From IMG/VR virus record IMGVR_UViG_3300042558_003926, positions 186,001 to 250,000 of that record: 64,000 nucleotides of DNA; one strand, 5' to 3'. This document shows positions 1 to 63,216 of this stretch, in pieces. The position numbers were made by a program, and so were the translations under genes. Position 1 is the stretch's first letter; the number at the start of each line of letters is the position of its first letter. Below the pieces are notes generated by a model, which made no database searches, was not told the DNA's origin, and was given only the letters and a program-made list of their open reading frames with translations.

Positions 1-1592
1 TTTAGATCATACATACCACCAGCGATTAAAGCAGATCCTAGGAAAGGTGTTTTATAAACTTGCCCATATGATATTGTCCCCATATAAACTGCCTTCAGAT
101 TCGGTATCTTCGGGAACATAAACATTTGACCTCCTGCTAATGTTCCGTAAATAGAACCTCTTCCTTCAAATCCTACCGATAATGTTCCAGATAAAAGACC
201 AACACTTTTCTTATTTATCCATGCATGATATCCAGTTAGATTTGGCCCTTTCTGAGCAGATACGTAGTCTAGTAAACCCCCACGAGCAGTTTCTCCATCC
301 CATCTCATATTGTGATACCCACCTGTTAATTTTAGTCCTGTTCTGACTTCAGAATTTTGAAAATTAAATCCAACAAAATCACTTGATGCTATTACAGTAG
401 GCTTACCCCCATCCTTATTTTGATTTATAGTCTTCGTAGCTCCCTGTGTAATATTTGTTTGCCCACCTTGTTCTTCTTGAGGTTTCGTCGTTTCCTCCGA
501 ATTTGTAGTGTTTCCATTTTCATTAGGAGATCCACTATTTGAATTTCCACCGGAGTTAGAGTTGCTATTTGTTGAATTGGTAGGAGTAGGAGTAGGAGTA
601 GGATTACCGTTAGTTATTCCCTGATTCGTTTCTCCTTTTTCCCCTTGCCCGGAAGTACTAGACCCCATATTGCCATTCCCGACAGAGCCGCTAGGATTAT
701 TATTGACAGTGCTATTGATATTAGTTCCATTGGTATTTGAATTTTGATTATTTACAGACGGCAAAGTCTGTGTATTTCCATTTTCATTTGATCCATTTTG
801 AGCTGCATTGCTTCCTGTTGGTGTCTCACCTTGAGCTCCAGCATTTGAACCAGAGGTTCCAATTCCTCCATTGTTTGAGCCTCCTTCATTTGATCCAGAA
901 GTGGCTTGATTTCCTCCATTAGTGTTACCTGTTCCATTAGTTCCATTTTGATTATTTGATGCGGTGCTATTGGAGATTCCCCCTGAATTTGAATTTGTAC
1001 CGGTGCTATTGCTTGTACTGGTCTCTGAGTTATTATTAGGATTTAAGTTACTGTTTGAACTTCCCGCATTATTTGTAGATCCGCCGGCATTAGTTCCACT
1101 ATTTACAGTTCCTGAAGCCGTCTGCTGAGAATTAGCATTCCCACCGTTATTATTCTTTTTATCCCCTTTTTTTTCCCGTGTATTTGATGAATTTGATGCT
1201 GCTGTTAAAGTTCCACTTAAAAAATCAGTAGCACCATTAGATAAATCCATGAGGGAAGAAAGAGAGTTAATTATACTTATAGTATTAAGAGCAACATCCT
1301 GAGCCATGTTTATCTGGCCGCCAAGTCCAATTATCTCAGAGCATGGAGATCCATTATATTGGGAAAATATATTATTAGCCCATGATTCAAAATTCCCATT
1401 GGAGAAGTCCTGCTGTGAAAAATTACCAATAAATCCATAGTATCCCACAGTAACAGTACCGTTTATTGGTACTATTAGATTTTTAATATTGCCAGTACAT
1501 GGATCAGTGTAAGAATAATTATACGTTTGCGCATTTGTTTTTAAAAAAGCAAACACCAAAAAAAATAAAGATATAGAAATTCTTATTCTCAC
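1..1592 (-). CDS. Secreted protein (partial, runs off the left edge): signal peptide, N-terminal domain, long Asn/Gly/Ser/Thr-rich linker, C-terminal beta-strand-rich (possible outer-membrane barrel) region
   Basis: Absent from the ORF track because it has no stop in the window. Hand translation from GTG at 1592 (overlaps the upstream TGA) gives MRIRISISLFFLVFAFLKTNAQTYNYSYTDPCTG..., then low-complexity NSG repeats and PTPTPTP, then alternating strands such as GLKLTGGYHNMRWDG and YGTLAGGQMF. I spot-read the start and end rather than checking every codon. Confidence 0.8.
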   Translation of the reverse strand, partial: MRIRISISLFFLVFAFLKTNAQTYNYSYTDPCTGNIKNLIVPINGTVTVGYYGFIGNFSQQDFSNGNFESWANNIFSQYNGSPCSEIIGLGGQINMAQDVALNTISIINSLSSLMDLSNGATDFLSGTLTAASNSSNTREKKGDKKNNNGGNANSQQTASGTVNSGTNAGGSTNNAGSSNSNLNPNNNSETSTSNSTGTNSNSGGISNSTASNNQNGTNGTGNTNGGNQATSGSNEGGSNNGGIGTSGSNAGAQGETPTGSNAAQNGSNENGNTQTLPSVNNQNSNTNGTNINSTVNNNPSGSVGNGNMGSSTSGQGEKGETNQGITNGNPTPTPTPTNSTNSNSNSGGNSNSGSPNENGNTTNSEETTKPQEEQGGQTNITQGATKTINQNKDGGKPTVIASSDFVGFNFQNSEVRTGLKLTGGYHNMRWDGETARGGLLDYVSAQKGPNLTGYHAWINKKSVGLLSGTLSVGFEGRGSIYGTLAGGQMFMFPKIPNLKAVYMGTISYGQVYKTPFLGSALIAGGMYDL

Positions 1593-2332
1593 CTTGGAAA
1601 TATCCCTTTCGATATAAGCCTAGTTACAACTCTTGATGAAGCTGTTTCTAAAGCTTTCTTTGTTGATATACCAACAGTAGATTGATTAAACTTCACATCA
1701 TCGCTAATGTCACCCAATATAGAAGATGTCTTGATTGTTACAGCTTCTCCCAGACCAGATCCAACTATAACCTGACTTGTTTCTGCATCAACGAATTTAA
1801 TCTGCAATCCTAATCTTGTAGTCTGATTTACTGTTTGCTGTCCATTTACCTTAATTATCTCATCTTCAGATACACTAAAGTCATAAACCTCTATATAAAC
1901 AAAATATTTAGCTAAAACCACATTACCTTTAACTTCAATCTTGTTCGAAGACACACCTTTATCTGAAGCCTTGTCCTGTGCGATCATCCTCTGCTTGATG
2001 TCTTCCTTTTCTTCGGTGAATATGAATCTGTTGGTATATTCTAGATACTCGATAACAATATTAGTTACACCAAGACCAACTCGTTTGTCTTTTAATTCTG
2101 GGTATAGATCATACAGTTCTTCGTTAATTCCGATTTTTAATAATTGTATTGGAACTTGTACTGATCCATCGTAATCAGCAACAGAATCTATCGATTGCTT
2201 CTTTTCAAAATCAGCAACGTACTGTTCTGTTTTAACAGAACCTATACCCCCTCCATTTTGAGGGGGTTGGGCCTGTAAGGTTTTACAGCTGAATAAGCTT
2301 AATATTAATGTTACAAATATTATATTTTTCAT
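1589..2332 (-). CDS. CsgG/HfaB-family lipoprotein
   Basis: Probable start at MKNIIFVTLILSLFSC (lipobox-like LFSC). The body RVGLGVTNIVIEYLEYTNRFIFTEE...VYDFSVSED...LGLQIKFVDAETSQVIVGSGLGEA fits the CsgG-like fold as I recognise it. Confidence 0.7.
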   Translation of the reverse strand: MKNIIFVTLILSLFSCKTLQAQPPQNGGGIGSVKTEQYVADFEKKQSIDSVADYDGSVQVPIQLLKIGINEELYDLYPELKDKRVGLGVTNIVIEYLEYTNRFIFTEEKEDIKQRMIAQDKASDKGVSSNKIEVKGNVVLAKYFVYIEVYDFSVSEDEIIKVNGQQTVNQTTRLGLQIKFVDAETSQVIVGSGLGEAVTIKTSSILGDISDDVKFNQSTVGISTKKALETASSRVVTRLISKGIFPR

Positions 2333-2334
2333 TA

Positions 2335-2982
2335 TTATTCTTCTATTTGGCTTCTTAATAATCCGCATTCTTGACATTCTTCGAATCCGTCTCCGTCTGC
2401 GTCTCCCCAAACATGTTCGCAATTTCTATGCTCGAAATATTCATCGATATCACCGTCTCCGTCTGTGTCGTATCCATCATTTATACCGTCTCCGTCTTCA
2501 TCAACTTCAGATTTTTGGAATTCCTCTGCAATAGGTTCTTCTATTATTGTCTCCTCTACTGCTGAAGGGTATTCAACTTCTGGTTCTTTGACGTAAACTT
2601 CCTCTACGACACTAGTTTTTTTTTCTCCTAAATGAGAGTCATCAGCTACATTAGAAATGCTTACTCCGTCTTCCTCGTCAACTTTTTGGATTAGCATTTT
2701 ATCTCGGTCTTCTGAGTTGAACCAGTAATCTACCACCTTATTCAAGTTACCTACAAAGGCTCCTAATAGGATCAATAACATTTCTTTCCAATCTTCTCCT
2801 ATAGTCTTACCAAAGAATACACCCGCATTAATACCCAATATGATAAGGGTAAATAATCCTAATACGATTGCTGTTATTCTCCATCTGTTTGCTTGCATTT
2901 GTTGAAGCATATAGTAGAATCTATTTTTATCTTCTACTTTTACGTAATCTGTTTTGCTGCTAAAGAATTTTTTAATTGCCAT
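2335..2982 (-). CDS. Membrane protein (2 TM) with acidic tail, DxDGDG Ca-binding-like motifs and terminal Cys/His cluster; holin candidate
   Basis: Two hydrophobic segments ending ...NKVVDYWFNSE, then DEDGDGINDGYDTDGDGDID and CEHVW...CQEC. It lies in the endolysin operon. Confidence 0.5.
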   Translation of the reverse strand: MAIKKFFSSKTDYVKVEDKNRFYYMLQQMQANRWRITAIVLGLFTLIILGINAGVFFGKTIGEDWKEMLLILLGAFVGNLNKVVDYWFNSEDRDKMLIQKVDEEDGVSISNVADDSHLGEKKTSVVEEVYVKEPEVEYPSAVEETIIEEPIAEEFQKSEVDEDGDGINDGYDTDGDGDIDEYFEHRNCEHVWGDADGDGFEECQECGLLRSQIEE

Positions 2983-3007
2983 TTTTATAATTTATTTTAT
3001 TTTTTAA

Positions 3008-3349
3008 TTACCAAGATTCCTCTTCCTTTTTAGGTTGAGTTTGGGTTGTCTGCTGAGGTGCAGGTTTTTCAATAACTCTTTCGTGTATTACTGTACCACC
3101 ACCGTTATTTTCAGTCTTTTGCTTGTTCTCTTGGTTTTGTTGTACATTTAAATTGATAACCGGTTGTTGTGCAGGAGCAGCTTGTTCAGTTTTATTTTCC
3201 TCGCTTTCTTCACCTCCACCACCAAAAATAGTAGTACTTATCCATACTCCACCTCCAGCAATTACTGTAGTTAATGTTCCGATAATTGTCTTTTTTAGTC
3301 CAGACCAAGTCCCGTCGTTGGTCTCTGGCGCATTTGTTTCTTCACTCAT
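3008..3349 (-). CDS. Small single-TM protein with Gln/Pro-rich tail
   Basis: TIIGTLTTVIAGGGVWISTTIFGG hydrophobic segment; co-directional in the operon. Confidence 0.6.
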   Translation of the reverse strand: MSEETNAPETNDGTWSGLKKTIIGTLTTVIAGGGVWISTTIFGGGGEESEENKTEQAAPAQQPVINLNVQQNQENKQKTENNGGGTVIHERVIEKPAPQQTTQTQPKKEEESW

Positions 3350-3357
3350 TTTTTATT

Positions 3358-5283
3358 TTATTTTATTTTAGCTATCTTTTCTACTATAGATGTTCCGTTC
3401 TCCGTATTTAGAGTTACGAAATATAATCCCGATTGTAATTTACCAAGATCTGTATAGTATGAAAATTGTCCGTTTGGCACCTGACCTGTTAATATAGTAG
3501 CTACCTTTCTACCTTGCAAATCTGATATGTATAACGAAGCATTTGAAGTTTCAGATAGGTTGAATGTTATCATAACATCCTTTTCAAATGGGTTAGGATA
3601 AACTAACATGGAGTTCGAGTCTATCAATTGTCCGTTAGAAATTTTCAATACCTGAAGTATACCATTTGTTGGGGTCAATGTTAAATCTTTAGAATTAGAA
3701 GAGTTACCCGCAAATTTTCTGGTAGTATATAATGGGCTCTCGTCCCATTGATTCTGTGGTTGGAGTGCTACAAATTGTAGTGTTACAACCTCATCTCCGT
3801 TTTTAAGGGTATTCTGATTATTGGTAATATCATATCCTCCCCAATCTATTTCCCCGTTATTTGGATTAATATAAGTTAACCATTGCATTGCAGAAGATGA
3901 TGAATAAACTCCCTTAAATGAAAGTAGGTCCTCGTTATATTTTAATCCAAATTGAAGTGAACTTAATTCGATGCCATTAGTTAATACCTTAACTGGTACG
4001 TTTACTAAATTTCCCTCTTGTACTGATATGTGTGGTACGTTAACTTCTATAGTAGAAGTTGGGAAATCATATTCCACTTTAGTATCGATTACATTGTAGA
4101 TTTGATTCTCTAATCCTGGAGCAGGCCCAACTATTACTTCGATTGGTGTTACACGAGCCATATTATAGCCAGTTCCATTGGCATCTCCCGGTACAGACAC
4201 GTAATAAACTACTGAATCAGGTTGACCTGGTAAAATTTCAAATGTGAAGTTTGTTGTTCCTGCTATTGATGCAGTGTAGTTAGTTGAAGATCCGTTGATT
4301 GTGTTATATTCTGATTGAGTAAAGAATTTAACGTCTTTAGTGTTATTTGGCCAAACGTTGAATCTGCCCGAGATTCTACCAAATACTCCCCAAGCGTCGG
4401 ATATTGTTACGTTGTTTGATCCATTAACATCTGCTGCATAGTAATCAAATCCTGTCATAGTACCGTTACCTAATACCCATTGGTTTATTAGCTGAGCATC
4501 CGCAGTTGAGATGATGTTACCGACTGTCATTGAATCACCTTGTACTGCTAATCTTACATCCCAATAGGTTGTATCCAGAGGAACAGATATAGCAAAGTCA
4601 CCATTTATGTCAGTAACGTATGTTGAGTGTTGTGTCCAAGTGTTACCTCCAAACGGTCTTCTCTGTAAAGCTAATGTTAAGTTCTTAGCTGGTGTTCCAG
4701 TTACGTTGGTGAATGTTCCATGGTAAGCAAAGTTTACTGGAGTAAATACACCGCCGTAATTGTGTACACTTAGTGTGGTATCCATACCGTCTTGTTTAGC
4801 AGCATACGGGGTAAAGGTCTGAGCTCCCGACCATGTCAAGTTGGATATGGAAACTAAGTTATTAAATGTAGCTGCTGGTGCATGAGTAAATGTTATTAAG
4901 AATCTCTCACCGTTTGGTATCGTATAAGTAGCACTTGAACCAGTGTAAACTAGAGTTATAGTAATGTATCCGTTTGCTGTGTTTGTTATGTACTGTAGAT
5001 CCAAGTTTGTCGGAGATCCGATCAAAGACACAGTAGCATTTGTGAAAGCTACATTATCGTAAAATACTCTAAATTGAACACCCGCAAATTTTGTAAGCGT
5101 TGTGTTTTGTAGAGTGATCTTAGCGTTTGTAGTTCCTTGAGCTGATGTTCCAATCTGATATTGAGCATCAATAATACCCCATAATCCGTTGGATGGAGCT
5201 GCCGGAACAGCCTGTGCAAAAAGGTGGTCCGTTGTTAACGAAAGCAAGCTTAAAAGCAGTGCTAAAATAATTTTGTTTTTCAT
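3358..5283 (-). CDS. T9SS cargo protein: signal peptide, cohesin-like domain, Ig-like domain, dockerin-like segment, second cohesin, T9SS type A C-terminal sorting domain
   Basis: Cohesin-like motifs (FAGVQFRVFYD; VNVPVKV...LSSLQFGLKYNEDLLSF). Dockerin-like ISTADAQLI...AADVNGSNNVTISDA. C-terminal LVYPNPFEKDVMITF...LYISDLQGRKV...LQSGLYFVTL...VEKIAKIK. Confidence 0.85.
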   Translation of the reverse strand: MKNKIILALLLSLLSLTTDHLFAQAVPAAPSNGLWGIIDAQYQIGTSAQGTTNAKITLQNTTLTKFAGVQFRVFYDNVAFTNATVSLIGSPTNLDLQYITNTANGYITITLVYTGSSATYTIPNGERFLITFTHAPAATFNNLVSISNLTWSGAQTFTPYAAKQDGMDTTLSVHNYGGVFTPVNFAYHGTFTNVTGTPAKNLTLALQRRPFGGNTWTQHSTYVTDINGDFAISVPLDTTYWDVRLAVQGDSMTVGNIISTADAQLINQWVLGNGTMTGFDYYAADVNGSNNVTISDAWGVFGRISGRFNVWPNNTKDVKFFTQSEYNTINGSSTNYTASIAGTTNFTFEILPGQPDSVVYYVSVPGDANGTGYNMARVTPIEVIVGPAPGLENQIYNVIDTKVEYDFPTSTIEVNVPHISVQEGNLVNVPVKVLTNGIELSSLQFGLKYNEDLLSFKGVYSSSSAMQWLTYINPNNGEIDWGGYDITNNQNTLKNGDEVVTLQFVALQPQNQWDESPLYTTRKFAGNSSNSKDLTLTPTNGILQVLKISNGQLIDSNSMLVYPNPFEKDVMITFNLSETSNASLYISDLQGRKVATILTGQVPNGQFSYYTDLGKLQSGLYFVTLNTENGTSIVEKIAKIK

Positions 5284-5336
5284 GATCTAAAAATGTTTGT
5301 TTTGGTTGTTTTGGTTTTTTGGGTTCTTAGTAGGTA

Positions 5337-6167
5337 TTACGAGCTAAGAGCTTTGTAATATTCCTTAAAGTGTTTAATTCTATCAGCTAATCCGATTGTT
5401 CCTCCATTTACTCTTTTAGTAACTGCAGTAACAGTTGCATCATCAGCTCCTCTATCGCAAATAGACCAAAGTTTATTTGAATCAAAAAAGAATGCTGCTG
5501 AAGCTAAAGGATATTTAGTAGCAACTAGATCCGGATTTGAAACACAATCTTCTCCGATAAACTTTGTGAAATTTGTGTAGTTTGATTTTCCTGTCAATTG
5601 GATGTATCCTCTACCTCTGAACTTGAAACCTTCTTTAGATGATTCATCACCGTTACCCATTCTAGATGCGTAAACTCTGGAAGCTATCTTCTCAGGTTGG
5701 CGAGCGTATGATTCATTAAGATTACCCGGAAAATATTTTCCAAAGATTTTCTTTAGTCCATCAGCAGAATAGTTGAGATTTTCGCTAACCGCTTTGAAAC
5801 CACCAGATTCATGCCCGCACTGTGCTAAGAAGTGTGCTAGTCTCAGATTGTTTGTAATATTAAATTTCTTTGCAGTGTCTGGTATCTGGGCTAGAACTGC
5901 ATCCGGAACGTGACCTCTAAGACCCTCCAGATTTAAATTCTCCATTTTTGGAATGGATACCGGTGCTGCAGCTGGTGTATTACTTTCGCCAAACATCTTA
6001 CTCCAAGTTCCAGATCCGACAATTCCATCGGCTGTTAATCCATTGGCTGCTTGCCATTCTTTAACTTTAGCTTCTGTTCCTGCTCCAAAAGCCCCGTCTG
6101 CATTTAAACCTAATTTTTGCTGAAGTTTTTTTACATCTTCACCACTAGATCCTTTTTTTAGTAGCAT
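5337..6167 (-). CDS. Endolysin: peptidoglycan-binding domain plus GH19 muramidase/chitinase-like domain
   Basis: LKKGSSGEDVKKLQQKLGLNADGAFG (PG-binding); RLAHFLAQCGHESGGF and FRGRGYIQLTGKSNY (GH19). Confidence 0.92.
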   Translation of the reverse strand: MLLKKGSSGEDVKKLQQKLGLNADGAFGAGTEAKVKEWQAANGLTADGIVGSGTWSKMFGESNTPAAAPVSIPKMENLNLEGLRGHVPDAVLAQIPDTAKKFNITNNLRLAHFLAQCGHESGGFKAVSENLNYSADGLKKIFGKYFPGNLNESYARQPEKIASRVYASRMGNGDESSKEGFKFRGRGYIQLTGKSNYTNFTKFIGEDCVSNPDLVATKYPLASAAFFFDSNKLWSICDRGADDATVTAVTKRVNGGTIGLADRIKHFKEYYKALSS

Positions 6168-6184
6168 AATTTTTTATTTTTTTT

Positions 6185-6193
6185 CTATATATC
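6185..6193 (-). promoter_or_regulatory. Putative late promoter GATATATAG (endolysin/envelope operon)
   Basis: Recurrent motif 17 nt upstream of the ATG. Confidence 0.55.
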
Positions 6194-6274
6194 CCCCCAT
6201 AAATCGAAAACATCCCCCTATATTTTTTAATATCCGCAACTTTTTAATATGTTTGAGTTATATAAAAATAAAGG

Positions 6275-27197: not shown

Positions 27198-27635
27198 ATG
27201 AATAAAACAATCTTGTTAATAGCAATATCCATTATCCTCGTTTCTTGTGAGGATGTAAATATCAAGAAGGCTTCTGATAAGGATAAGATTTCTTTAGATA
27301 CTACCGCAGAATTTTCGGATCAGAATTATAGCGTATATCGTTTAAATAACTGCGAGTACATTGTATACGGTTCAGGGAATAACAGATGGGGATCACATAG
27401 AGGCGATTGTAAAAATCCAATTCACAATAAATCAGAGGACAAAAATTCTTTCCCTTATGATTCCTCTATTTATCGGGAAAAGCATTTTGATTGTTATGTT
27501 GAAGAAATAATGGAGGAGGAGAATGAAAAATATAAGTATTGGGTTTACACTGAATGCGGGATTGCATTTTTAACCAATAGGAAATATAAAATAGGAGAAA
27601 AGCTTAAAGGATTTAAATCACCTAAGCACAAATGA
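27198..27635 (+). CDS. Putative lipoprotein
   Basis: MNKTILLIAISIILVSC lipobox. Confidence 0.65.
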   Translation: MNKTILLIAISIILVSCEDVNIKKASDKDKISLDTTAEFSDQNYSVYRLNNCEYIVYGSGNNRWGSHRGDCKNPIHNKSEDKNSFPYDSSIYREKHFDCYVEEIMEEENEKYKYWVYTECGIAFLTNRKYKIGEKLKGFKSPKHK

Positions 27636-39922: not shown

Positions 39923-41017
39923 CTAGATTTGTTTTAATGCGAATCCTAAATCCGAAAAATCCCTCATACCTGTTCTTTTCAATATACCATCCTTAATATC
40001 TGGATGATTTTTAAGGTACTGTAGGTCCAACGGATTTTTTTGGAAATGACTATCTGGCAAAGCCGTTGCAATAAATTCCTTAAATTTATCATCATCCTTA
40101 CTAAATGCCATATAATGCGAAATTTGATAGTGATGGTCTATATATGAGCCAGGACCCTTATCCATTATCATAGGAAGTACCTCTATATCGAAAGGAGAAG
40201 CGTAAAAGTAATCACACTGGAAAGCAACTATTTTTCTTTCCCTATCGAAATATCCAGCTAGAGAATTTAATGCAGGTGATTCTGACATGGTTCTTCTTTC
40301 ATGGTTTACCGATAAAATTCTAAGAGGTTCCGAAACCTCTATAGTAGGAAATGTCATTAGATCTTTGATTCCTCCCAGAGAGTATAGTAGCATTTCTCCG
40401 CCAACTTTTTCGGGGAGAAATTCCAATGACTCCAGATCATTCAACCGAATGATCACAAATTTACCCTTCACTGTACCAAAATTTATAGATGCTAGTATAT
40501 CTGGATCAGATGTTTGAGGATCCTGTGAGAATGTTCCCGAAATATCCACTGCTTGACTTACTCTATTCCATTTCCATTTAGATTTAGTCCCCTTGTTTAT
40601 CTCGATAATCTGATTAGCCGTCAAAGGACCAGTATTTTCATTTGGCTCATTCCTTTTTATTTCTCCGGAAAATCTATCAAGTAGATTAAGAAGCATATCA
40701 TACAGGGTGAAATCACTCTGGTATCTTTTAATAAATCCAGAGGTTGCCGCTTTATCTCTTATATAACCGGATTTCTGTAAAACGATTCCGTCTGGGTACA
40801 TATAAGAAATTGATGGATTATTGGTTTTTAACATGATGGTAGAGTTCTTGGCTTGAAGTGGGGTTGTGACTTCTACAAATCCGATATCCTCTAAAGACTT
40901 CCATATTCCCATTTCTTTCCAGTTAGAAGGCCAATGTTCTTTTTCTATATCAGATAGATTTGAATTCTCGTAGATATAACCAGAATTAAACTCCTTGAAC
41001 CCCTTTATATTTTTCAT
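39923..41017 (-). CDS. Tagged protein with a degenerate copy of the LRR-like module found in the 48-53 kb array
   Basis: MKNIKGFKEFN...YE; WKWNRVSQAVDISGTF...FGTVKGKF...LESLEFLPEKVGG. Confidence 0.65.
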   Translation of the reverse strand: MKNIKGFKEFNSGYIYENSNLSDIEKEHWPSNWKEMGIWKSLEDIGFVEVTTPLQAKNSTIMLKTNNPSISYMYPDGIVLQKSGYIRDKAATSGFIKRYQSDFTLYDMLLNLLDRFSGEIKRNEPNENTGPLTANQIIEINKGTKSKWKWNRVSQAVDISGTFSQDPQTSDPDILASINFGTVKGKFVIIRLNDLESLEFLPEKVGGEMLLYSLGGIKDLMTFPTIEVSEPLRILSVNHERRTMSESPALNSLAGYFDRERKIVAFQCDYFYASPFDIEVLPMIMDKGPGSYIDHHYQISHYMAFSKDDDKFKEFIATALPDSHFQKNPLDLQYLKNHPDIKDGILKRTGMRDFSDLGFALKQI

Positions 41018-47064: not shown

Positions 47065-47745
47065 TTAGTTCCCGATCATCACGGGAATCGGTGTTCCCAC
47101 TGGATAAGGAAATCCTTCCTTAGCTGCTGTTACTGAGGTCTGTCCGTTTTTGACAGGGATTGCAACACGAAGAGGAACTGCATCCTCATTCAAAGGCCCG
47201 TAAACTCTAGCCAGTACAATACCGGTTTCGGTTGTATCGAATATTACACCAGGCATGGCAAACATGTTGCTCTCGCTTGTTGCTGGATCTGACATATCAA
47301 TTACAAATGCACGATTAACCGGTGACATCAACTCCCATTTCTTGCTATCAGGATTGAACTGTGGGATAACGGTTGTGGTGTCAAAGTACCAGAATAGAGA
47401 CCAAACGGTGTTGTCAGTGCCATCTGGGGTTTGAAAATTGCTGGCAACATTAAAGTCTCCCCAGGTTCCACCACTACCGTACATGGCCAAGTTAGAGATA
47501 GAAGGTCCATTAAGTACAGGACAGATAGCGCACCCTTCACGATACTCAACGCCCTGAATTGTTATGGTCTTTCCAGTAGGAACTGCTGCAGAAGCTCCAC
47601 AGAAAGCGAATTGACCTTCGTGAATTCTAAGAACCCCCGCTTCTTTCTCTTGTGCAACTTCGATTTGTGTCTCATGCTTCTTATCCGAGCATGATGTAAA
47701 AGCAAGAATTGCGGCTACCATTAATAGTATTTTTGTTCTTTTCAT
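47065..47745 (-). CDS. Putative lipoprotein
   Basis: MKRTKILLMVAAILAFTSC lipobox; GATATATAA at 47783-47791 on the minus strand. Confidence 0.7.
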   Translation of the reverse strand: MKRTKILLMVAAILAFTSCSDKKHETQIEVAQEKEAGVLRIHEGQFAFCGASAAVPTGKTITIQGVEYREGCAICPVLNGPSISNLAMYGSGGTWGDFNVASNFQTPDGTDNTVWSLFWYFDTTTVIPQFNPDSKKWELMSPVNRAFVIDMSDPATSESNMFAMPGVIFDTTETGIVLARVYGPLNEDAVPLRVAIPVKNGQTSVTAAKEGFPYPVGTPIPVMIGN

Positions 47746-48423: not shown

Positions 48424-49098
48424 TTATATCATACCCTTAAATCCATGGTAAGCCCTTATCAATTCCAGTCTCTTTATTTCTTCCGGCCCCACCCACTCGA
48501 ACTCTGGTTTGTAGAGTAGCATCTGATCCTCTAACGGGATCTCGCTCCAAAGTGACTCTACAGCCTCCTGATAGCTCATCTCATCTTCCATTTGGTAGAA
48601 TATACTCCTGAGTGTATCCTCAGAAACCGGATTATTTACACATTTGAACATCCCTCCGATTTTCTGAGGGGCACCTTCGAGAGAGGTGAGCTGGTTGTTG
48701 CTACAATTGAAATCGCTACCGATTTCCTGTGGTGCTCCCTCCAGTGAGGTAAGCTGGTTGTTGTTACAAAAGAAATCAAGGCCAACTCTCTTTGGTGATC
48801 CCACCAGCGAGGTGAGCTGATTGTCGTCACAATAGAAACCCTCAGCCTCCTGTGGTGCTCCCTCCAGTGAGGTGAGACGGTTGTCCTCGCATGAAAAATA
48901 TGCTCTCACTACACCAAATCTAACTCCTTTAAAATCTGTCAGATCCTGTCCAGTGCAGCTAAAGCTCCCATCCACATCAACAAGTCCGGTATGAGGATTA
49001 ATAGTCCATTTATCAGAGCACTCATCAAGCCACTCGATCTGCTCCGGGGTAAGCTCTACCGCACTCTCAAACATCTTATATGTCTTTAGATTCTTCAT
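48424..49098 (-). CDS. LRR-like repeat protein, paralog 6 of 6 (4 modules)
   Basis: MKNLKTYKMFES tag; xxNQLTSLEGAPQxVGxxFxC repeats; conserved C-terminus. Confidence 0.85.
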   Translation of the reverse strand: MKNLKTYKMFESAVELTPEQIEWLDECSDKWTINPHTGLVDVDGSFSCTGQDLTDFKGVRFGVVRAYFSCEDNRLTSLEGAPQEAEGFYCDDNQLTSLVGSPKRVGLDFFCNNNQLTSLEGAPQEIGSDFNCSNNQLTSLEGAPQKIGGMFKCVNNPVSEDTLRSIFYQMEDEMSYQEAVESLWSEIPLEDQMLLYKPEFEWVGPEEIKRLELIRAYHGFKGMI

Positions 49099-49100
49099 TC

Positions 49101-50156
49101 CTATATCATACCCTTAAATCCTTGGTAAGCCTTTAACGCTTCCAGCTTCCTTCCCTCCTCTGGACTCACCCACTCGAACTCTGGTCTGTACAGCAGAGCC
49201 TGATCCTCTATAGGGATCTCATTCCAGAGTGATTCCATAGCCTGGATGTAACTCTTCCCTTTCTCCATGGGGTATAATATTCTCCTGAGTGTCTCTTCAG
49301 AAACCGGATTGCTCTCGGAATAGAAAATCCCATTAATCTCCCGTGGTGCCCCATCCAGTGAGGTGAGCTGGTTGTTTTCGCAGAAGAAACCCCCTCTGAC
49401 CCGCTGTGGTGCTCCCTCCAGTGAGGTGAGCTGGTTGTTCCTGCAAATGAAATCCTCTCCAACCTCCTGTGGTGCTCCCTCTAGTGTGGTGAGCTGATTG
49501 TGGTCACAACTGAACCAAAATCCAACCTTCTGTGGTGCTCCCACCAGTGAGGTGAGCTGGTTGTTGCTACAATTGAAAGCCTGTCCAACACTCTGCGGTG
49601 CTCCCTCCAGAGAGGTGAGCTGGTTGTTGGTACACTTGAAACTCCCTCTGACCCGCTGTGGTGCTCCCACCAGTGATGTGAGCCGGTTGTTCTCACAATA
49701 GAAATACCCAGCAATCTCCTGTGGTGCTCCCACCAGTGATGTGAGCCGGTTGTTCTGGCAATAGAAATACCCACCAACATCCTGTGGTGCTCCCTCCAGT
49801 GAGGTGAGCTGGTTGTTGCTACAATTGAAATCCTGCCCAACACTCTGTGGTGCTCCCACCAGTGAGGTGAGCTGGTTGTCGTGGCAATAGAAATCCCCTC
49901 CAACATCCTGTGGTGCTCCCTCCAGTGAGGTGAGCTGATTGTTCCGGCAAATGAAATCCTCACTGACCACTCCAAACCTAACGTCTTTAAAATCTGTCAG
50001 ATCCTGTTCAGAGCAATCGAAATCCCCATCCACATCAACCAGTCCGGTTTGTGGATTAATAGTCCATTCATCAGTGCACTTGTCCAACCACTCGATCTGC
50101 TCTGGTGTAAGCTCTACCGCACTCTCAAACATCTTATATGTCTTTAGATTCTTCAT
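49101..50156 (-). CDS. LRR-like repeat protein, paralog 5 of 6 (10 modules)
   Basis: Same architecture. Confidence 0.85.
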   Translation of the reverse strand: MKNLKTYKMFESAVELTPEQIEWLDKCTDEWTINPQTGLVDVDGDFDCSEQDLTDFKDVRFGVVSEDFICRNNQLTSLEGAPQDVGGDFYCHDNQLTSLVGAPQSVGQDFNCSNNQLTSLEGAPQDVGGYFYCQNNRLTSLVGAPQEIAGYFYCENNRLTSLVGAPQRVRGSFKCTNNQLTSLEGAPQSVGQAFNCSNNQLTSLVGAPQKVGFWFSCDHNQLTTLEGAPQEVGEDFICRNNQLTSLEGAPQRVRGGFFCENNQLTSLDGAPREINGIFYSESNPVSEETLRRILYPMEKGKSYIQAMESLWNEIPIEDQALLYRPEFEWVSPEEGRKLEALKAYQGFKGMI

Positions 50157-50157
50157 T

Positions 50158-50844
50158 TTATATCATACCTTTAAATCCTTGGTAAGCTCTTAACGCTTCC
50201 AGCTTCCTTCTCTCCTCTGGACTCACCCACTCGAACTCTGGTCTGTACAACAGAGTCTGATCTTCTAACGGAATCTTGCTCCAGAGTGATTCCACAGCCT
50301 GCATGTGACTCTCCCCTTTCTTCATGAGGGAGAATATTCTCTTGAGTGTTTCATTAGAAACTGGGTTGCCGTAGCAATAGAAAATCAATCTCACCCGCTG
50401 TGGTGCTCCCACTAGAGAAGTGAGCTGGTTGTTGTCACATCTAAAATCCCCTTCAACCTCCCGTGGTGCACCCTCCAGTGAGGTGAGCTGATTGTTGTTA
50501 CAATAGAAATCCCATCCAACCTTCTGTGGTGCTCCCTCCAGTGTGGTGAGCTGGTTGTCACTACAACTGAAACCCCCACCAACCCGCTGTGGTGCTCCCT
50601 CCAGTGTGGTGAGCTGGTTGCCGTAGCAATAGAAATACCCACTGACCACTCCAAACCTAACGTCTTTAAAATCTGGCAGATCCATACGAGAGCAGCCAAA
50701 ATCCCCATCCACATCAACCAGTCCGGTTTGTGGATTGAGTGTCCAGGTACCATCAATGCACTCGTCAAGCCACTCGATCTGCTCTGGTGTAAGTTCTCCT
50801 ACACTCTCAAACAGTTGGCGATATGTCTTTAGATTCTTCATCAT
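50158..50844 (-). CDS. LRR-like repeat protein, paralog 4 of 6 (4 modules)
   Basis: Same architecture; start at 50844 or 50841. Confidence 0.85.
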   Translation of the reverse strand: MMKNLKTYRQLFESVGELTPEQIEWLDECIDGTWTLNPQTGLVDVDGDFGCSRMDLPDFKDVRFGVVSGYFYCYGNQLTTLEGAPQRVGGGFSCSDNQLTTLEGAPQKVGWDFYCNNNQLTSLEGAPREVEGDFRCDNNQLTSLVGAPQRVRLIFYCYGNPVSNETLKRIFSLMKKGESHMQAVESLWSKIPLEDQTLLYRPEFEWVSPEERRKLEALRAYQGFKGMI

Positions 50845-50848
50845 AATA

Positions 50849-51661
50849 CTATATCATACCTTTAAATCCTTGGTAAGCTCTTAACGCTTCCAGTTTTCTT
50901 ACCTCCTCTGGACTCACCCACTCGAACTCTGGTCTGTACAACAGAGCCTGATCCTCTACTGGAATCTCGTTCCAGAGTGTCTCCACAGCCTGAATGTAAC
51001 TCTCCCCTTTCTTCATGAGGGAGAATATGCTCTTAAGAGTCTCCACAGAAACTGGGTTGTTCTCACAATAGAAATAATCCCGTCCGATCTCCAGTGTTGC
51101 TCCCTCCAATGAGGTGAGCTGGTTGTCCCCACAATAGAAATACCCATCCACCTTCTGTGGTGCTCCCTCCAGTGTGGTGAGCTGATTGTTCTCACAATTG
51201 AACCTCCCTCCAACCCGCTGTGGTGCTCCCTTCAGTGAGGTGATCTGGTTGCCGTTACACTCGAAATACCCTCCAACCTTCTGTGGTGCTCCCTCCAGTG
51301 TGGTGAGCTGATTGTTGTTACAAAAGAAACCACTTCTGACCCGCTGTGGTGCTCCCACCAGTGAGGTGAGCTGGTTGTTGCTACAACTGAAATGCTCTCC
51401 AACCTCCTGTGGCGATCCCTCCAATGAGGTGAGCTGGTTGTTCCTACAATTGAAACTCCCACTCACCACTCCAAACTTAACGCCTTTAAAATCTGTCAGG
51501 TCCTGTCTAAAGCAATCGAAGTCTCCTTTCACATCAACCAGTCCTGTTCGTGGATTGATCTTCCAGGTACCATCAGTGAACTTGTCCAGCCACTCGATCT
51601 GCTCTGGTGTGAGCTCTTGTGTGTTCTCAAACATTTGGCGATATGTCTTTAGATTCTTCAT
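50849..51661 (-). CDS. LRR-like repeat protein, paralog 3 of 6 (6 modules)
   Basis: Same architecture. Confidence 0.85.
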   Translation of the reverse strand: MKNLKTYRQMFENTQELTPEQIEWLDKFTDGTWKINPRTGLVDVKGDFDCFRQDLTDFKGVKFGVVSGSFNCRNNQLTSLEGSPQEVGEHFSCSNNQLTSLVGAPQRVRSGFFCNNNQLTTLEGAPQKVGGYFECNGNQITSLKGAPQRVGGRFNCENNQLTTLEGAPQKVDGYFYCGDNQLTSLEGATLEIGRDYFYCENNPVSVETLKSIFSLMKKGESYIQAVETLWNEIPVEDQALLYRPEFEWVSPEEVRKLEALRAYQGFKGMI

Positions 51662-52408
51662 TTATATCATACCTTTAAATCCTTGGTAAGCCTGGAGAGC
51701 TTCCAGCTTTCTTCTCTCCTCTGGACTCACCCACTCGAACTCTGGTCTGTACAGCAGAGCCTGATCCCCTAATGGAATCTCACCCCAGAGAGACTCCACA
51801 GCCTGAAGATAGCTCTCACCCTTCGTCATGGTGGAGAAGATGCTCTTGAGTGTCCCTTTGGAAACTGGGTTGCCCTCACAATTGAAATGCCGTCCGATCT
51901 CCCGTGGTGCTCCCTCCAGTGAGGTGAGCTGGTTGTTACTACAATAGAAATACCTCCCAACCTTCTGTGGTGCTCCCTCCAGTGTGGTGAGCTGATTTCC
52001 CTCACAAATGAAATCACCCTCAACCTTCTGTGGTGCCCCCACCAGTGAGGTGAGCTGGTTGTTGTCACACCTGAAACGCTCTCCTACCTCCTGTGGTGCC
52101 CCCACCAGTGAGGTGAGCTGGTTGTTGTTACAATAGAAACCCTCACCAACCTTCTGTGGTGCTCCCTCCAGTGAGGTGAGCTGGTTGTAGTCACAACCGA
52201 AATCCTTACTCACCACTCCAAACCTAATCCCTTTGAAATCCGTCAGATCATGTTCAGAGCAATCGAAGTCTCCTTTCACATCAACCAGTCCTGTTCGTGG
52301 ATTGATCTTCCAGGTACCATCAATGCACTCGTCAAGCCACTCGATCTGCTCTGGTGTGAGCTCTCCCACACTCTCAAACAGTTGGCTATATGTCTTTAGA
52401 TTCTTCAT
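51662..52408 (-). CDS. LRR-like repeat protein, paralog 2 of 6 (5 modules)
   Basis: Same architecture. Confidence 0.85.
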   Translation of the reverse strand: MKNLKTYSQLFESVGELTPEQIEWLDECIDGTWKINPRTGLVDVKGDFDCSEHDLTDFKGIRFGVVSKDFGCDYNQLTSLEGAPQKVGEGFYCNNNQLTSLVGAPQEVGERFRCDNNQLTSLVGAPQKVEGDFICEGNQLTTLEGAPQKVGRYFYCSNNQLTSLEGAPREIGRHFNCEGNPVSKGTLKSIFSTMTKGESYLQAVESLWGEIPLGDQALLYRPEFEWVSPEERRKLEALQAYQGFKGMI

Positions 52409-53281
52409 TTATATCATGCCTTTAAATCCAGCGTAAGCCTTAATGACATCCAGCTTCTTACCAAACTCTGGACTCACCCACTCGAACTCTGGTCTGTATA
52501 ACAGAGCCTGATCATCTAATGGAATCTCGTTCCAGAGTGTCTCCACAGCCTGCAGGTAGCTATTCCCTTCCTTCGTGAGGGAGAATATGCTCTTGAGTGT
52601 CTCTTCAGAAACGGGGTTTTTCTCACAATAGAAACCCCCTCCAACCTTTTGTGGTGCTCCCTCCAGAGAGGTAAGTTGGTTTCTATCGCAATTGAAACTT
52701 CCACCGACCTCCTGTGGTGCTCCCTCCAGTGAGGTGAGGTTGTTGCCCTCACAAAGGAAACGCTCTCCTACCTCCTGTGGTGCCCCCTCCAGCGAGGTGA
52801 GCTGGTTGTTGTTACAACTGAAACCTCTTCCGACCCGCTGTGGTGCTCCCTCCAGTGAGGTGAGCTGGTTGTCGCTGCAATAGAAATCATGTCCAACCCG
52901 CTGAGGTGCTCCCTCTAGGGAGATGAGCTGGTTGTCCTCACAATTGAAATTCGCTCCGACTTCCTGAGGTGCTCCCACCAGCGAGGTGAGCTGGTTGTAC
53001 CTACAATAGAAATCCTCTCCAACCTTCTGTGGTGCTCCCTCTAGGGAGATGAGCTGGTTGTTGCTGCAATAGAAATACCCACTGACCACTCCAAACCTAA
53101 TCCCTTTGAAATCTGTCAGGTCCTGTTCAGAGCAATTGAAATCCCCATCCACATCAACAAGTCCGGTTTGTGGATTGATCTTCCAGGTACCATCAGTGCA
53201 CTTGTCCAACCACTCGATCTGCTCTGGTGTAAGCTCTCCCACACTCTCAAACAGTTGGCGATACGTCTTCAGATTTTTCAT
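52409..53281 (-). CDS. LRR-like repeat protein, paralog 1 of 6 (7 modules)
   Basis: Same architecture. Confidence 0.85.
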   Translation of the reverse strand: MKNLKTYRQLFESVGELTPEQIEWLDKCTDGTWKINPQTGLVDVDGDFNCSEQDLTDFKGIRFGVVSGYFYCSNNQLISLEGAPQKVGEDFYCRYNQLTSLVGAPQEVGANFNCEDNQLISLEGAPQRVGHDFYCSDNQLTSLEGAPQRVGRGFSCNNNQLTSLEGAPQEVGERFLCEGNNLTSLEGAPQEVGGSFNCDRNQLTSLEGAPQKVGGGFYCEKNPVSEETLKSIFSLTKEGNSYLQAVETLWNEIPLDDQALLYRPEFEWVSPEFGKKLDVIKAYAGFKGMI

Positions 53282-53285
53282 CCCA

Positions 53286-53294
53286 CTATATATC
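53286..53294 (-). promoter_or_regulatory. Putative late promoter GATATATAG driving the LRR array
   Basis: 4 nt upstream of the first paralog. Confidence 0.6.
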
Positions 53295-61417: not shown

Positions 61418-61630
61418 ATGAAGAATCAAAGTCATATCAACGATCTACTTAGAACTCAAAAGGTTCTAGCTTCTTGCAACAGTAAGGAGCACGTGGATGC
61501 TGCTATCCGATACTTCCGCTTATTTATTAAAAAATGGAAACACTTATTTAGTGTTGAGGTGGTGACGGATTTGGAGATGAATTTCACTATCGATGTTGCA
61601 AAGAAACTAAAACAAATACAATTGAAATGA
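61418..61630 (+). CDS. Hypothetical protein
   Basis: ORF track. Confidence 0.55.
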   Translation: MKNQSHINDLLRTQKVLASCNSKEHVDAAIRYFRLFIKKWKHLFSVEVVTDLEMNFTIDVAKKLKQIQLK

Positions 61631-63168: not shown

Positions 63169-63216
63169 CTCTAGATTATTTAATTATTCTATATATCTAA
63201 AAAAACATTGCTTTTA

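What the first reader, a model, noticed from the sequence alone, without database searches (positions are those of the whole stretch)
1..6193. Endolysin-headed operon encoding a host-envelope module: T9SS cohesin/dockerin cargo, CsgG channel homolog and amyloid-like secreted protein
Seen in sequence: six co-directional, closely spaced genes follow one late-type promoter. In order they are a GH19 endolysin, a cohesin-dockerin-cohesin-T9SS CTD protein, a single-TM protein, a 2-TM acidic protein, a CsgG-family lipoprotein, and a signal-peptide protein with several hundred aa of Asn/Gly/Ser low complexity plus a beta-strand-rich C-terminus. Established: T9SS CTDs route proteins through the Bacteroidota type IX system. 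CsgG forms the outer-membrane channel for curli, whose subunits are Asn/Gln/Gly/Ser-rich. Inference: the phage builds a surface or outer-membrane assembly late in infection. Possible roles are an alternative to spanins for outer-membrane disruption, receptor masking, or aggregation of infected cells. I cannot tell these apart.
Basis: partly seen in the sequence, partly recalled or inferred. Interest (0 to 1): 0.8.

Follow-up and report, generated by a model that had tools for sequence, protein, structure and literature searches.

The report
Phage late lysis-and-envelope operon
A large phage of Flavobacterium-like bacteria carries one late operon that joins its cell-wall-digesting lysis genes to a conserved, undescribed set of exported envelope proteins, which may show how such phages deal with the host outer membrane.

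Summary
Six tightly packed minus-strand genes follow one copy of a motif, GATATATAR, that marks about a dozen other genes in the window. Identities were confirmed:
- a GH19 endolysin;
- a T9SS-sorted cohesin protein;
- a one-TM protein;
- a two-TM acidic protein;
- a lipoprotein that is a remote, full-length CsgG homolog;
- a secreted protein with a disordered Asn/Gly/Ser/Thr stretch and a beta-rich C-terminus.

Three corrections:
- The unit is longer. An identical contig shows about 12 genes over 10.4 kb, adding a dockerin-like lectin, a nuclease, a small CsgG/LpoB-like protein, a secreted HExxH protein and a second wall hydrolase, then a terminator.
- The last protein is not amyloid-like. 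It models as a 12-stranded outer-membrane barrel joined by a spacer of variable length (52-395 residues) to a small N-domain with two conserved cysteines.
- Channel function of the CsgG homolog is unproven, because its hairpins are short and polar.

The core (genes 2, 3, 5, 6, 9 and the lectin) recurs in 77 viral contigs but in only 2 genome-collection contigs. Lysis genes sit beside or inside it in five arrangements. My best reading, at 0.38, is a late envelope complex acting at the outer-membrane step of lysis, plus a surface lectin scaffold.

The parts
6185..6193 (-). Probable late promoter motif GATATATAG, 18-26 nt upstream of the g1 start codon
   Evidence: GATATATAR occurs 12 times in the window against 2.4 expected, and none of 100 shuffles reached 12. 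The nine sites checked against the gene list lie just upstream of a gene in its own orientation; these include a tail-fibre-like gene and a second endolysin-like gene. It is the only ATATATAR motif on the coding strand between g1 and the terminator in L002. That it is 'late' is an inference.
5337..6167 (-). g1: endolysin of 276 aa with a PG_binding_1 domain and a GH19 domain, and no signal peptide
   Evidence: Pfam PF01471 E 1e-13, PF00182 E 1e-9; phrog_181 E 4.6e-69.
3358..5283 (-). g2: secreted 641-aa scaffold protein. It has a signal peptide, an N-terminal cohesin-like domain (4729-5214), a dockerin-like Ca loop (4393-4512), a cohesin domain (3661-4050) and a T9SS type A C-terminal sorting domain (3373-3603).
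   Evidence: Cohesin 30.7 bits, Por_Secre_tail 50.2 bits and TIGR04183 44.3 bits are all above their cutoffs. Dockerin_1 at 14.6 bits is below its cutoff. N-domain against the cohesin profile: hhalign probability 42%.
3008..3349 (-). g3: 113-aa protein predicted to cross the inner membrane once. It has Lys-Lys before a Gly/Thr-rich TM segment, a tail of about 65 aa predicted to lie in the periplasm, and a Trp as the last residue in all 44 homologs.
   Evidence: Sequence. An alignment of 44 homologs shows a conserved TM segment, PVIxVNV and TVIRERVIEKP blocks and an acidic stretch ending in Trp. The topology is inferred from the positive-inside rule.
2335..2982 (-). g4: 215-aa protein with two TM segments and an acidic tail carrying DxDxDG-type repeats and a Cys/His cluster. 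It is the only holin-like candidate in this operon.
   Evidence: TM windows at residues 33-61, pI 4.23. There is no family hit, and the nearest Atlas clusters are all viral. It is present in 33 of 81 loci. An unrelated 87-98-aa two-TM protein turns up in 55 locus hits (36 with the 93-aa query, 19 with the 98-aa one); in L008 and L069 it lies between g3/g4 and g5, and in L031 directly before the endolysin.
1589..2332 (-). g5: 247-aa lipoprotein (lipobox LFSC, Cys16 at 2285-2287). It is a remote full-length CsgG homolog with a near-invariant YPEL motif (2093-2104).
   Evidence: 20 of 32 family members hit Pfam CsgG, best E 1.9e-17. hhalign against E. coli CsgG gives probability 94.6%, E 6.7e-8, over 225 columns. 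The AF2 model has pLDDT 82, and its top PDB fold hits are CsgG at E 2e-8, TM 0.5-0.59. A lipobox is present in 84 of 120 close relatives.
1..1592 (-). g6 (530 of 609 residues are in the window). It has a signal peptide, an N-domain with two conserved Cys (1218-1526), a disordered Asn/Gly/Ser/Thr spacer (408-1217) and the first part of a 12-stranded outer-membrane beta-barrel (1-398).
   Evidence: The GTG start overlaps the g5 stop codon. The full length comes from the identical contig L002. In the AF2 model the 12 strands span residues 399-608 at pLDDT 75-90, and the spacer has pLDDT below 40. Fold hits are autotransporter and intimin beta-domains, FapF, PcoB and Tsx. Atlas structural hits are outer-membrane barrel families.

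Best explanation
This is the promoter-proximal 6.2 kb of a late transcription unit of about 10.4 kb and 12 genes. It belongs to a phage of Flavobacteriia with T4-like genes; the contigs carrying it are 238 and 290 kb long.

The unit joins the lysis genes to a phage-specific set of exported envelope proteins.
- Lysis genes: the GH19 endolysin g1, the two-TM holin-like g4, and a second wall hydrolase g11 beyond the window edge.
- Envelope proteins: the inner-membrane-anchored g3; the CsgG-homolog lipoprotein g5; g6, an outer-membrane 12-stranded barrel carrying an N-domain on a flexible spacer; a small CsgG/LpoB-like protein g9; the T9SS-sorted cohesin scaffold g2; and a dockerin-like C-type-lectin/LamG protein g7.

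Proposed mechanism (inferred). Late in infection g3, g5, g6 and g9 are exported by Sec, Lol and BAM. They assemble into a complex at or across the periplasm and outer membrane. Once the holin and endolysin have removed the wall, this complex weakens or opens the outer membrane, which is the job spanins do in other phages. In parallel, g2 is exported and surface-anchored by the host T9SS and may recruit g7 through a cohesin-dockerin contact, coating the cell or its debris.

Shown: gene identities, the single shared promoter motif, the tight spacing, the restriction to phages, and the repeated linkage to lysis genes.
Inferred: the timing, the localisation, complex formation and the outer-membrane-breaching role.
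For: - One GATATATAR motif and no coding-strand terminator until a hairpin after the twelfth gene.
- The same motif precedes a tail-fibre-like gene and a second endolysin-like gene.
- The core g2-g3-g5-g6-g7-g9 keeps its order in most of 81 loci.
- Lysis genes stay with the core through rearrangements. The endolysin is upstream and divergent in 26 loci, embedded after g5 in 11, downstream and co-directional in 7, and upstream and co-directional in 4.
- In L031 a holin-like gene, the endolysin and the second hydrolase close the module. In L008 a hydrolase-like gene heads it and a holin-like gene sits between g3 and g5. In L069 the endolysin lies between g5 and g6.
- On L088, a 39%-identical g5 homolog is preceded, with an ATGA overlap, by a protein with a TM segment followed by a charged, heptad-like tail that I read by eye as an i-spanin-like coiled coil. 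It is followed by homologs of g6 and g9. This gives the inner-membrane-protein plus outer-membrane-lipoprotein arrangement of two-component spanins.
- No canonical spanin pair was seen beside the lysis genes in the 64-kb window.
- g5 and the g6 barrel are strongly conserved, at 75-100% and 72-98% identity among the 120 best hits listed for each.
Against: - No functional or expression data exist; no RNA run was listed.
- In the cultured relative, phage immuto, the module is about 8 kb from the annotated lysozyme-type gene, and 33 of 81 loci show no endolysin within the fetched flanks.
- g5 is far larger than any o-spanin, and some lineages have lost its lipid-anchor Cys.
- g3 has no coiled coil.
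- Nothing in a lysis role explains the surface lectin and cohesin pair, the nuclease or the variable g6 spacer.
- Clustering could reflect shared late timing only.
- The rest of the genome (over 200 kb) was not searched for spanins.
Confidence: 0.38

Rival explanations
1. Surface masking or superinfection exclusion. The T9SS-anchored cohesin scaffold g2 displays the dockerin-like lectin g7. Together with the phage outer-membrane proteins g5, g6 and g9, it covers or alters receptors. Progeny and rival phages then do not adsorb to infected cells or lysis debris. The lysis genes are neighbours only because they share late timing.
For: - g2 has a signal peptide and a bona fide type A sorting domain.
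- g7 has a C-type lectin domain with EPN/WND motifs, a LamG insert and a near-threshold dockerin (20.2 bits; sequence).
- g2 and g7 share a common framework: in several loci the g2 N-half query also matches the lectin gene at about 30% identity.
- Phage-encoded T9SS cargo has been proposed to act in competition or superinfection (PMC7468147).
- A nuclease gene travels with the module in 29 of 81 loci, and the immuto copy begins with a signal-peptide-like segment.
Against: - Exclusion functions are usually made early, whereas this unit has the motif shared with tail genes.
- In phage immuto and L069 the cohesin protein or its N-half lacks a sorting domain, so surface display is not uniform.
- This reading gives no role to g3.
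- It does not explain why holin and endolysin genes are inserted inside the module.
Confidence: 0.25
2. A curli-like secretion system. g5 forms a nonameric CsgG-type outer-membrane channel. This channel exports an unfolded Asn/Gly/Ser-rich substrate, namely g6 or its spacer, which builds a fibre or matrix.
For: - g5 aligns with E. coli CsgG over its whole length, including both hairpin regions.
- The family's most conserved motif, YPEL, aligns with the CsgG constriction loop YPASNF.
- CsgG structures are the best fold matches.
- The g6 spacer composition (N 24%, G 17%, S 15%) superficially recalls curlin.
Against: - The g5 segment matching CsgG's first membrane hairpin (residues 155-173) is polar and charged across the family, and both hairpins are shorter than in CsgG.
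- The same fold is used outside channels: it is fused to kinases and caspases, and the lipoprotein PelC is among the next-best fold hits.
- g6 has no S-x5-Q-x4-N-x5-Q curlin-type repeat, and no Pfam family matched it at all. Its spacer is 5% hydrophobic, disordered and varies from 52 to 395 residues. The protein ends in its own outer-membrane barrel, and its N-domain has two conserved Cys that suggest folding in the periplasm.
- None of the neighbouring genes scanned matched a curli family in Pfam.
Confidence: 0.1
3. Control of wall metabolism. g5 and g9 act like LpoB/TolB-N-type periplasmic adaptors. They bind host peptidoglycan synthases or hydrolases, or the phage endolysin, to time or localise wall breakdown.
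For: - 7 of 32 members of the g5 family also match Pfam LpoB.
- g9-type proteins are short versions of the same fold family.
- The module is flanked by two wall hydrolase genes in this genome.
Against: - CsgG is a much better fold and profile match than LpoB.
- This reading gives no role to the g6 barrel or to g2 and g7.
- No direct evidence supports it.
Confidence: 0.1
4. The block is a recent neutral capture of host genes or an assembly chimera.
For: The domains (T9SS sorting domain, cohesin, CsgG-like fold, outer-membrane barrel) are typical of Bacteroidota cells.
Against: - The identical block was assembled in at least 6 independent samples.
- 77 viral contigs carry g5, most of them with the ordered core, against only 2 hits in 185,579 species genomes. 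Both of those are MAG contigs that carry the same module together with an endolysin gene.
- GC content equals that of the flanks.
- The genes show strong purifying conservation.
Confidence: 0.02

Closest known systems
CsgG, the curli secretion channel lipoprotein (Pfam PF03783; PDB 4UV3, 4UV2)
   Same: g5 is a lipoprotein of similar length. Its profile aligns with E. coli CsgG over 225 columns (probability 94.6%). CsgG is its best fold match. The conserved YP motif aligns with the CsgG constriction loop.
   Different: g5 itself does not reach the Pfam model. Its hairpins are shorter and the first is polar. No curli family (CsgA/B/E/F) was detected among its neighbours. Some lineages have lost the lipobox. 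It is encoded by a phage in a late lysis-linked operon.
Two-component spanins (lambda Rz/Rz1 type)
   Same: An inner-membrane protein gene (g3; a TM protein with an i-spanin-like tail on L088) is followed by an outer-membrane lipoprotein gene (g5). Both sit in a cluster with holin-like and endolysin genes under late control.
   Different: g3 lacks a coiled coil. g5 is a 225-aa globular CsgG-fold protein rather than a short Pro-rich lipoprotein. Extra partners (the g6 barrel and g9) are conserved with them.
Type V (autotransporter and intimin) beta-domains and other 12-stranded outer-membrane barrels (NalP 1UYN, EstA 3KVN, intimin 4E1S, FapF 5O65)
   Same: The g6 C-terminus models as 12 antiparallel strands. 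It follows an N-terminal domain and a linker, and ends in a hydrophobic C-terminal signal in many homologs.
   Different: There is no Pfam autotransporter match and no helix predicted before the barrel. The linker is disordered and its length is unconstrained. The two conserved Cys in the N-domain suggest that it stays in the periplasm.
T9SS type A cargo, including the phage-encoded cargo reported for 'Cryophage' (Bellas et al. 2020, PMC7468147)
   Same: g2 has a Sec signal peptide plus a C-terminal Por_Secre_tail/TIGR04183 domain. It is encoded by a phage of a T9SS-bearing host group.
   Different: Here the cargo is a cohesin/dockerin-like scaffold embedded in a conserved lysis-linked operon. 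It is not a variable glycoside hydrolase island.
Cohesin-dockerin scaffolds (cellulosomal and non-cellulosomal)
   Same: There is a cohesin domain above the Pfam cutoff in g2, and Ca-loop dockerin-like segments in g2 and g7.
   Different: The dockerins are below threshold and only one of the two loops is canonical. No binding has been shown. No carbohydrate-active enzymes are attached.
PelC and LpoB-type lipoprotein rings and adaptors
   Same: They share the alpha/beta fold family and outer-membrane lipoprotein anchoring. PelC forms a ring without spanning the membrane, which would suit the polar g5 hairpins.
   Different: They are weaker matches than CsgG (TM 0.27-0.33), and g5 is longer because of its extended beta hairpins.

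Membership tests
CsgG curli channel family | Match to Pfam PF03783 above the gathering score | tested here: not met
   g5 has no CsgG hit at E <= 0.1. However, 20 of 32 homologs in alignment A1 match, best E 1.9e-17, and hhalign of the family profile against E. coli CsgG gives probability 94.6%. Homology is therefore transitive.
CsgG curli channel family | CsgG fold over the full length | tested here: met
   AF2 model with pLDDT 82. Its best PDB matches are CsgG 4UV2, 4UV3 and 6L7C, at E 2e-8, TM 0.5-0.59, over 219-250 columns.
CsgG curli channel family | N-terminal lipobox and lipidated Cys | tested here: met
   LFSC in the window's g5. A lipobox is present in 84 of 120 close relatives and lost in some lineages.
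CsgG curli channel family | Two amphipathic hairpins that form a 36-stranded nonameric barrel | tested here: inconclusive
   Both regions align but are shorter. Residues 155-173 are polar across the family. The oligomer could not be modelled with these tools.
CsgG curli channel family | Genomic partners CsgE, CsgF and CsgA/B | tested here: not met
   Pfam scans of g1-g11 gave no match to any curli family.
Curlin or functional amyloid subunit | Imperfect Gln/Asn repeats that form a beta-helix core | tested here: not met
   g6 has no S-x5-Q-x4-N-x5-Q curlin-type motif, and the only tandem repeat is a 24-nt hexamer array. The spacer is disordered, 5% hydrophobic and varies from 52 to 395 residues.
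T9SS type A cargo | Sec signal peptide plus a C-terminal sorting domain (PF18962/TIGR04183) | tested here: met
   g2 scores 50.2 bits (cutoff 27) and 44.3 bits (cutoff 23) at residues 561-639 of 641. It has a hydrophobic N-terminus ending in AQA.
T9SS type A cargo | The host has a T9SS and exports the protein | not testable with these tools
   The cultured relative infects Flavobacterium sp. LMO8. That Flavobacteriia carry a T9SS is established knowledge. Export was not tested.
Cohesin-dockerin pair | Cohesin domain above the Pfam cutoff | tested here: met
   g2 residues 412-541 score 30.7 bits against a cutoff of 24.1. The N-terminal domain reaches only hhalign probability 42%.
Cohesin-dockerin pair | Dockerin with duplicated Ca-binding loop-helix, above the cutoff | tested here: inconclusive
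   g2 scores 14.6 bits and g7 20.2 bits against a cutoff of 22.9. One loop is canonical and one is degenerate, as read from the sequence.
GH19 phage endolysin | GH19 catalytic domain, usually with a wall-binding domain | tested here: met
   PF00182 scores 39 bits (cutoff 25.5), PF01471 51.7 bits, and phrog_181 E 4.6e-69.
Two-component spanin | i-spanin: an N-terminal TM segment plus a periplasmic coiled coil | tested here: not met
   g3 has the TM segment, but its tail is rich in Pro, Gly and Gln with short beta-like blocks. An i-spanin-like partner is seen only on L088, and it was judged by eye, not with a coiled-coil predictor.
Two-component spanin | o-spanin: a short outer-membrane lipoprotein whose gene is adjacent to or embedded in the i-spanin gene | tested here: not met
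   g5 is adjacent and lipidated, but it is 247 aa, globular and of the CsgG fold.
Type Va autotransporter | Pfam autotransporter beta-domain with a pore-filling helix | tested here: not met
   g6 has no Pfam hit. The model has 12 strands but no helix before the barrel. The fold resemblance is only generic.

The most novel reading that the evidence does not exclude
g3, g5, g6 and g9 make up a previously unrecognised machine that replaces spanins in large Bacteroidota phages. An inner-membrane anchor, a CsgG-fold lipoprotein ring and a tethered 12-stranded barrel together breach the outer membrane once the wall is digested. This is coupled to a T9SS-displayed cohesin-lectin coat that keeps progeny from sticking to debris.
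Probability: 0.25. Interest if true: 0.85.

Novelty: new variant of a known kind. Interest (0 to 1): 0.65.

Why it matters
How phages of Bacteroidota get through the outer membrane at lysis is not established. My searches of the held paper library found no account of it and no description of this module. This operon gives a concrete, widely conserved candidate set. The g5 family has about 3,900 sequences, and the module occurs on 77 viral contigs of up to 373 kb. A cultured relative, Flavobacterium phage immuto (genes 13-19), is available for testing.

It also shows three things that would be of wider interest:
- a phage using the host T9SS for a structural scaffold rather than an enzyme;
- a CsgG-fold protein recruited by a virus;
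- a tethered outer-membrane barrel architecture with no described counterpart.

Even if the lysis role is wrong, the module is a large, strongly conserved, unannotated investment in the host envelope by abundant aquatic phages.

Tried and rejected
- Direct family searches of g3-g6 in Pfam, PHROGs and NCBIfam gave nothing above threshold.
- Searching PDB sequences with g5 and with its family profile gave only chance hits. The CsgG link needed member-wise Pfam scanning, hhalign and fold search.
- The sigma-70 consensus scan was uninformative: it found fewer sites than in shuffled sequence. The G-rich word GGGGGAT upstream of g1 is not enriched. An unbiased k-mer count of upstream regions found the real motifs.
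The single-protein scan reaches only close relatives.
I reran it without that row.
- No RNA run was listed, so co-transcription and timing rest on sequence alone.
- The contexts of distant bacterial g5 relatives were not informative for the phage role. They sit next to a caspase/PEGA protein or a DUF3187 protein, or lie on short contigs.
- The N-domain of g6 occurs only in g6-type proteins. The g4 Atlas search found only unannotated viral clusters. g4 shows no similarity to the 93-aa holin-like protein.
- Literature searches found no description of this module.

Full report
**What is in the window**

All six genes lie on the minus strand: g1 6167..5337, g2 5283..3358, g3 3349..3008, g4 2982..2335, g5 2332..1589, and g6 from GTG 1592 off the left edge. 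The gaps are 53, 8, 25 and 2 nt, followed by a 4-nt GTGA overlap. GC content is 0.35-0.39, the same as the flanks.

The window is phage DNA. It encodes a Dda-like helicase, two T4-type RNA ligases and tail proteins. The exact g5 protein is recorded in 53 index blocks of the assembly collection (24 contigs were read). The same gene order was recovered from six different samples, on contigs of up to 238 kb, and from a 289,651-bp IMG/VR contig (L026). It is therefore not a chimera.

**The transcription unit**

A sigma-70 consensus scan was uninformative. An unbiased count of 7-mers in 47 upstream regions gave two motif classes.

The first class, GATATATAR, occurs 12 times against 2.4 expected, and none of 100 shuffles reached 12. 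Nine of the 12 sites can be matched to a listed gene, and each lies just upstream of that gene in its own orientation. It precedes g1 (6185-6193), a tail-fibre-like gene and a second endolysin-like gene. It resembles the T4 late promoter, so 'late' is a reasonable inference. It is not a measurement.

The second class is a T-run followed by CCCG, then TATCTTTG. It looks like a Bacteroidota -7 element and precedes other genes.

On the identical contig L002 the motif occurs once on the coding strand, before g1. No terminator-like site follows on that strand until a strong hairpin at L002 16533-16562. The unit therefore has about 12 genes over 10.4 kb. Beyond the window edge come:
- g7, with Lectin_C, a Laminin_G_3 insert and Dockerin_1 at 20.2 bits;
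- g8, an Endonuclease_NS gene;
- g9, a small secreted protein related to the C-terminal part of g5;
- g10, a secreted protein with an HExxH motif;
- g11, which matches an endolysin PHROG;
- a 46-aa basic protein.

**Gene identities**

- g1 is a GH19 endolysin with a peptidoglycan-binding domain.
- g2 has a signal peptide, a cohesin above the Pfam cutoff and a type A T9SS sorting domain at its very C-terminus. Its dockerin and N-terminal cohesin are below threshold.
- g3 is conserved in 44 homologs. They share a Gly/Thr-rich TM segment, two short conserved blocks and an acidic stretch ending in Trp.
- g4 has two TM segments and an acidic tail with Ca-loop-like repeats and a Cys/His cluster. It matches no family.
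- g5 has a lipobox but no direct family hit. Even so, 20 of 32 of its homologs match Pfam CsgG. The family profile aligns with E. coli CsgG over 225 columns at 94.6% probability. An AF2 model (pLDDT 82) has CsgG structures as its best PDB matches, followed by PelC, FlgT and LptE. The nearly invariant YPEL motif aligns with the CsgG constriction loop. Against a channel, both hairpins are shorter than in CsgG, and the first is polar across the family. The fold also occurs fused to kinases and caspases.
- g6 models as three parts: an N-domain of about 100 residues with two conserved Cys, a disordered spacer, and a 12-stranded barrel at pLDDT 75-90. The barrel resembles autotransporter and intimin beta-domains, FapF, PcoB and Tsx and outer-membrane barrel clusters in the Atlas. 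Among homologs the spacer ranges from 52 to 395 residues and changes composition, while both end domains keep their length. It has no curlin-type repeats and is 5% hydrophobic. It is a tether, not an amyloid core.

**Distribution**

- g5 has 3,946 database relatives at E <= 0.001. The best 120 are 73-100% identical to it.
- The g6 barrel has 1,092 relatives, and the best 120 are 72-98% identical.
- A scan of IMG/VR gave 77 loci on contigs of up to 373 kb.
- The same scan of 185,579 species genomes gave two contigs from MAGs (metagenome-assembled genomes). Both carry the same module together with an endolysin gene.
- The cultured Flavobacterium phage immuto carries the module as genes 13-19, all annotated as hypothetical or by domain only.

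This refutes a recent neutral host capture.

**Synteny**

Across 81 loci, g2, g3, g5, g6, g7 and g9 keep the same order in most. Counts are g2 65-71, g3 62, g6 73, g7 56 and g9 61.

The endolysin is not a fixed head of the module:

| Endolysin position | Loci |
|---|---|
| Upstream, divergent | 26 |
| Embedded just after g5 | 11 |
| Downstream, co-directional | 7 |
| Upstream, co-directional (as in the window) | 4 |
| Not within the fetched flanks | 33 |

g4 is present in 33 loci. An unrelated 87-98-aa two-TM protein is present in most others. It lies between g3 and g5 in L008, between g4 and g5 in L069, and directly before the endolysin in L031. It is probably the holin there.

On a marine fragment (L088), a 39%-identical g5 homolog is preceded, with overlapping codons, by a protein with a TM segment and a charged tail that looks i-spanin-like by eye. 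It is followed by homologs of g6 and g9.

**How it most likely works**

Shown:
- a single late-type motif and tight packing;
- predicted export signals on most products;
- restriction to phages;
- strong conservation;
- repeated intermixing with holin-like and wall-hydrolase genes.

Inferred: g3, g5, g6 and g9 form an envelope complex that acts on the outer membrane once the wall is digested. g2 is displayed by the host T9SS and may recruit g7. I put this at 0.38.

The rivals are:
- surface masking or exclusion, with lysis genes as neighbours only (0.25);
- a curli-like channel and substrate (0.10);
- LpoB-like control of wall enzymes (0.10);
- capture or chimera (0.02).

The evidence against the lysis reading is stated plainly. 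There is no expression or phenotype data. Phage immuto keeps the module about 8 kb from its lysozyme-type gene. Some lineages have lost the g5 lipid anchor. The lectin, the nuclease and the variable tether are not explained by a lysis role.

**Comparison and novelty**

Each part belongs to a known kind: GH19 endolysin, T9SS cargo, cohesin, CsgG fold and 12-stranded barrel. Phage-encoded T9SS cargo has been reported before (PMC7468147).

Several things were not found in the literature searched: the combination of these parts, its conservation, and its coupling to lysis genes. g5 fails direct CsgG family membership and lacks the curli partners. The g3/g5 pair fails the spanin definitions. g6 fails the autotransporter definitions. 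I rate the finding as a new variant of a known kind, namely a phage lysis and envelope cassette. There is a 0.25 chance that the core is a categorically new outer-membrane-breaching device.

Noticed in passing
window, upstream of genes starting at 6657, 14385, 18515, 30913, 33006, 36025, 46519, 55827, 56516, 58854 and 60850 (+ strand) and of the minus-strand gene 39923-41017: A second conserved upstream motif: a T-run, then CCCG and AAC, then TATCTTTG-like about 15 nt further on. It resembles the Bacteroidota -7 TAnnTTTG element. It probably marks early or middle promoters, as distinct from the GATATATAR class.
   Followed up: partly
window 48424-53281 (- strand): Six tandem paralogous genes of 224-351 aa lie in a GC-rich island (GC 0.45-0.485 against 0.36-0.39 elsewhere). 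Each is built from a variable number of 22-residue leucine-rich-like repeats (NNQLTSLEGAPQ...) between conserved ends. The GATATATAG motif precedes the first one (53286-53294).
   Followed up: partly
window 62335-63168 (- strand), motif at 63189-63197: A second endolysin-like gene (phrog_9589, E 7e-12) carries the same late-type motif. The phage therefore has at least three wall-hydrolase-like genes when g11 is counted.
   Followed up: partly
L002 12540-16562 (identical contig, beyond the window's left edge): The operon continues with a lectin/LamG protein with a dockerin-like segment, a nuclease, a small CsgG/LpoB-like protein, a secreted HExxH protein, a second hydrolase, a 46-aa basic protein and a hairpin terminator.
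   Followed up: yes
L088 479-3068: A marine metagenome fragment carries, in order, a protein with a TM segment and a charged i-spanin-like tail (judged by eye), a g5-like lipoprotein overlapping it (ATGA), a short-linker g6 homolog of 329 aa, and a 170-aa relative of g9.
   Followed up: partly
L069 4443-12649: In a divergent phage clade the cohesin protein lacks a sorting domain. A separate 122-aa lipoprotein whose C-terminal sequence looks sorting-domain-like by eye (it matched no Pfam family) follows it. A 139-aa small barrel-like protein and the endolysin lie between g5 and g6, and the g6 spacer is rich in Ala, Ser and Lys.
   Followed up: partly
P0206, P0218, P0222, P0228, P0243; L090 6001-8546: Distant bacterial relatives of g5 are fused to Ser/Thr kinases or caspase (Peptidase_C14) domains, or sit next to a caspase/PEGA protein. 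This suggests the fold also serves as a periplasmic sensor or anchoring module.
   Followed up: no
window 6191-6218 (- strand): Two copies of a G-rich word (GGGGGAT), 21 nt apart, lie in the divergent intergenic region just upstream of the late motif. The word is not enriched in the window (6 found, 7.8 expected), and its role is unknown.
   Followed up: partly
window 580-603: A perfect hexanucleotide array (GTAGGA x4) encodes the Pro-Thr run inside the g6 spacer. It fits slippage as a source of the spacer's variation in length.
   Followed up: no
window 27198-27635 (+), 47065-47745 (-), 61627-61929 (+): Three further lipoprotein-like ORFs with good lipoboxes. None forms an obvious embedded or overlapping spanin pair with a neighbouring gene for a TM protein.
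   Followed up: partly
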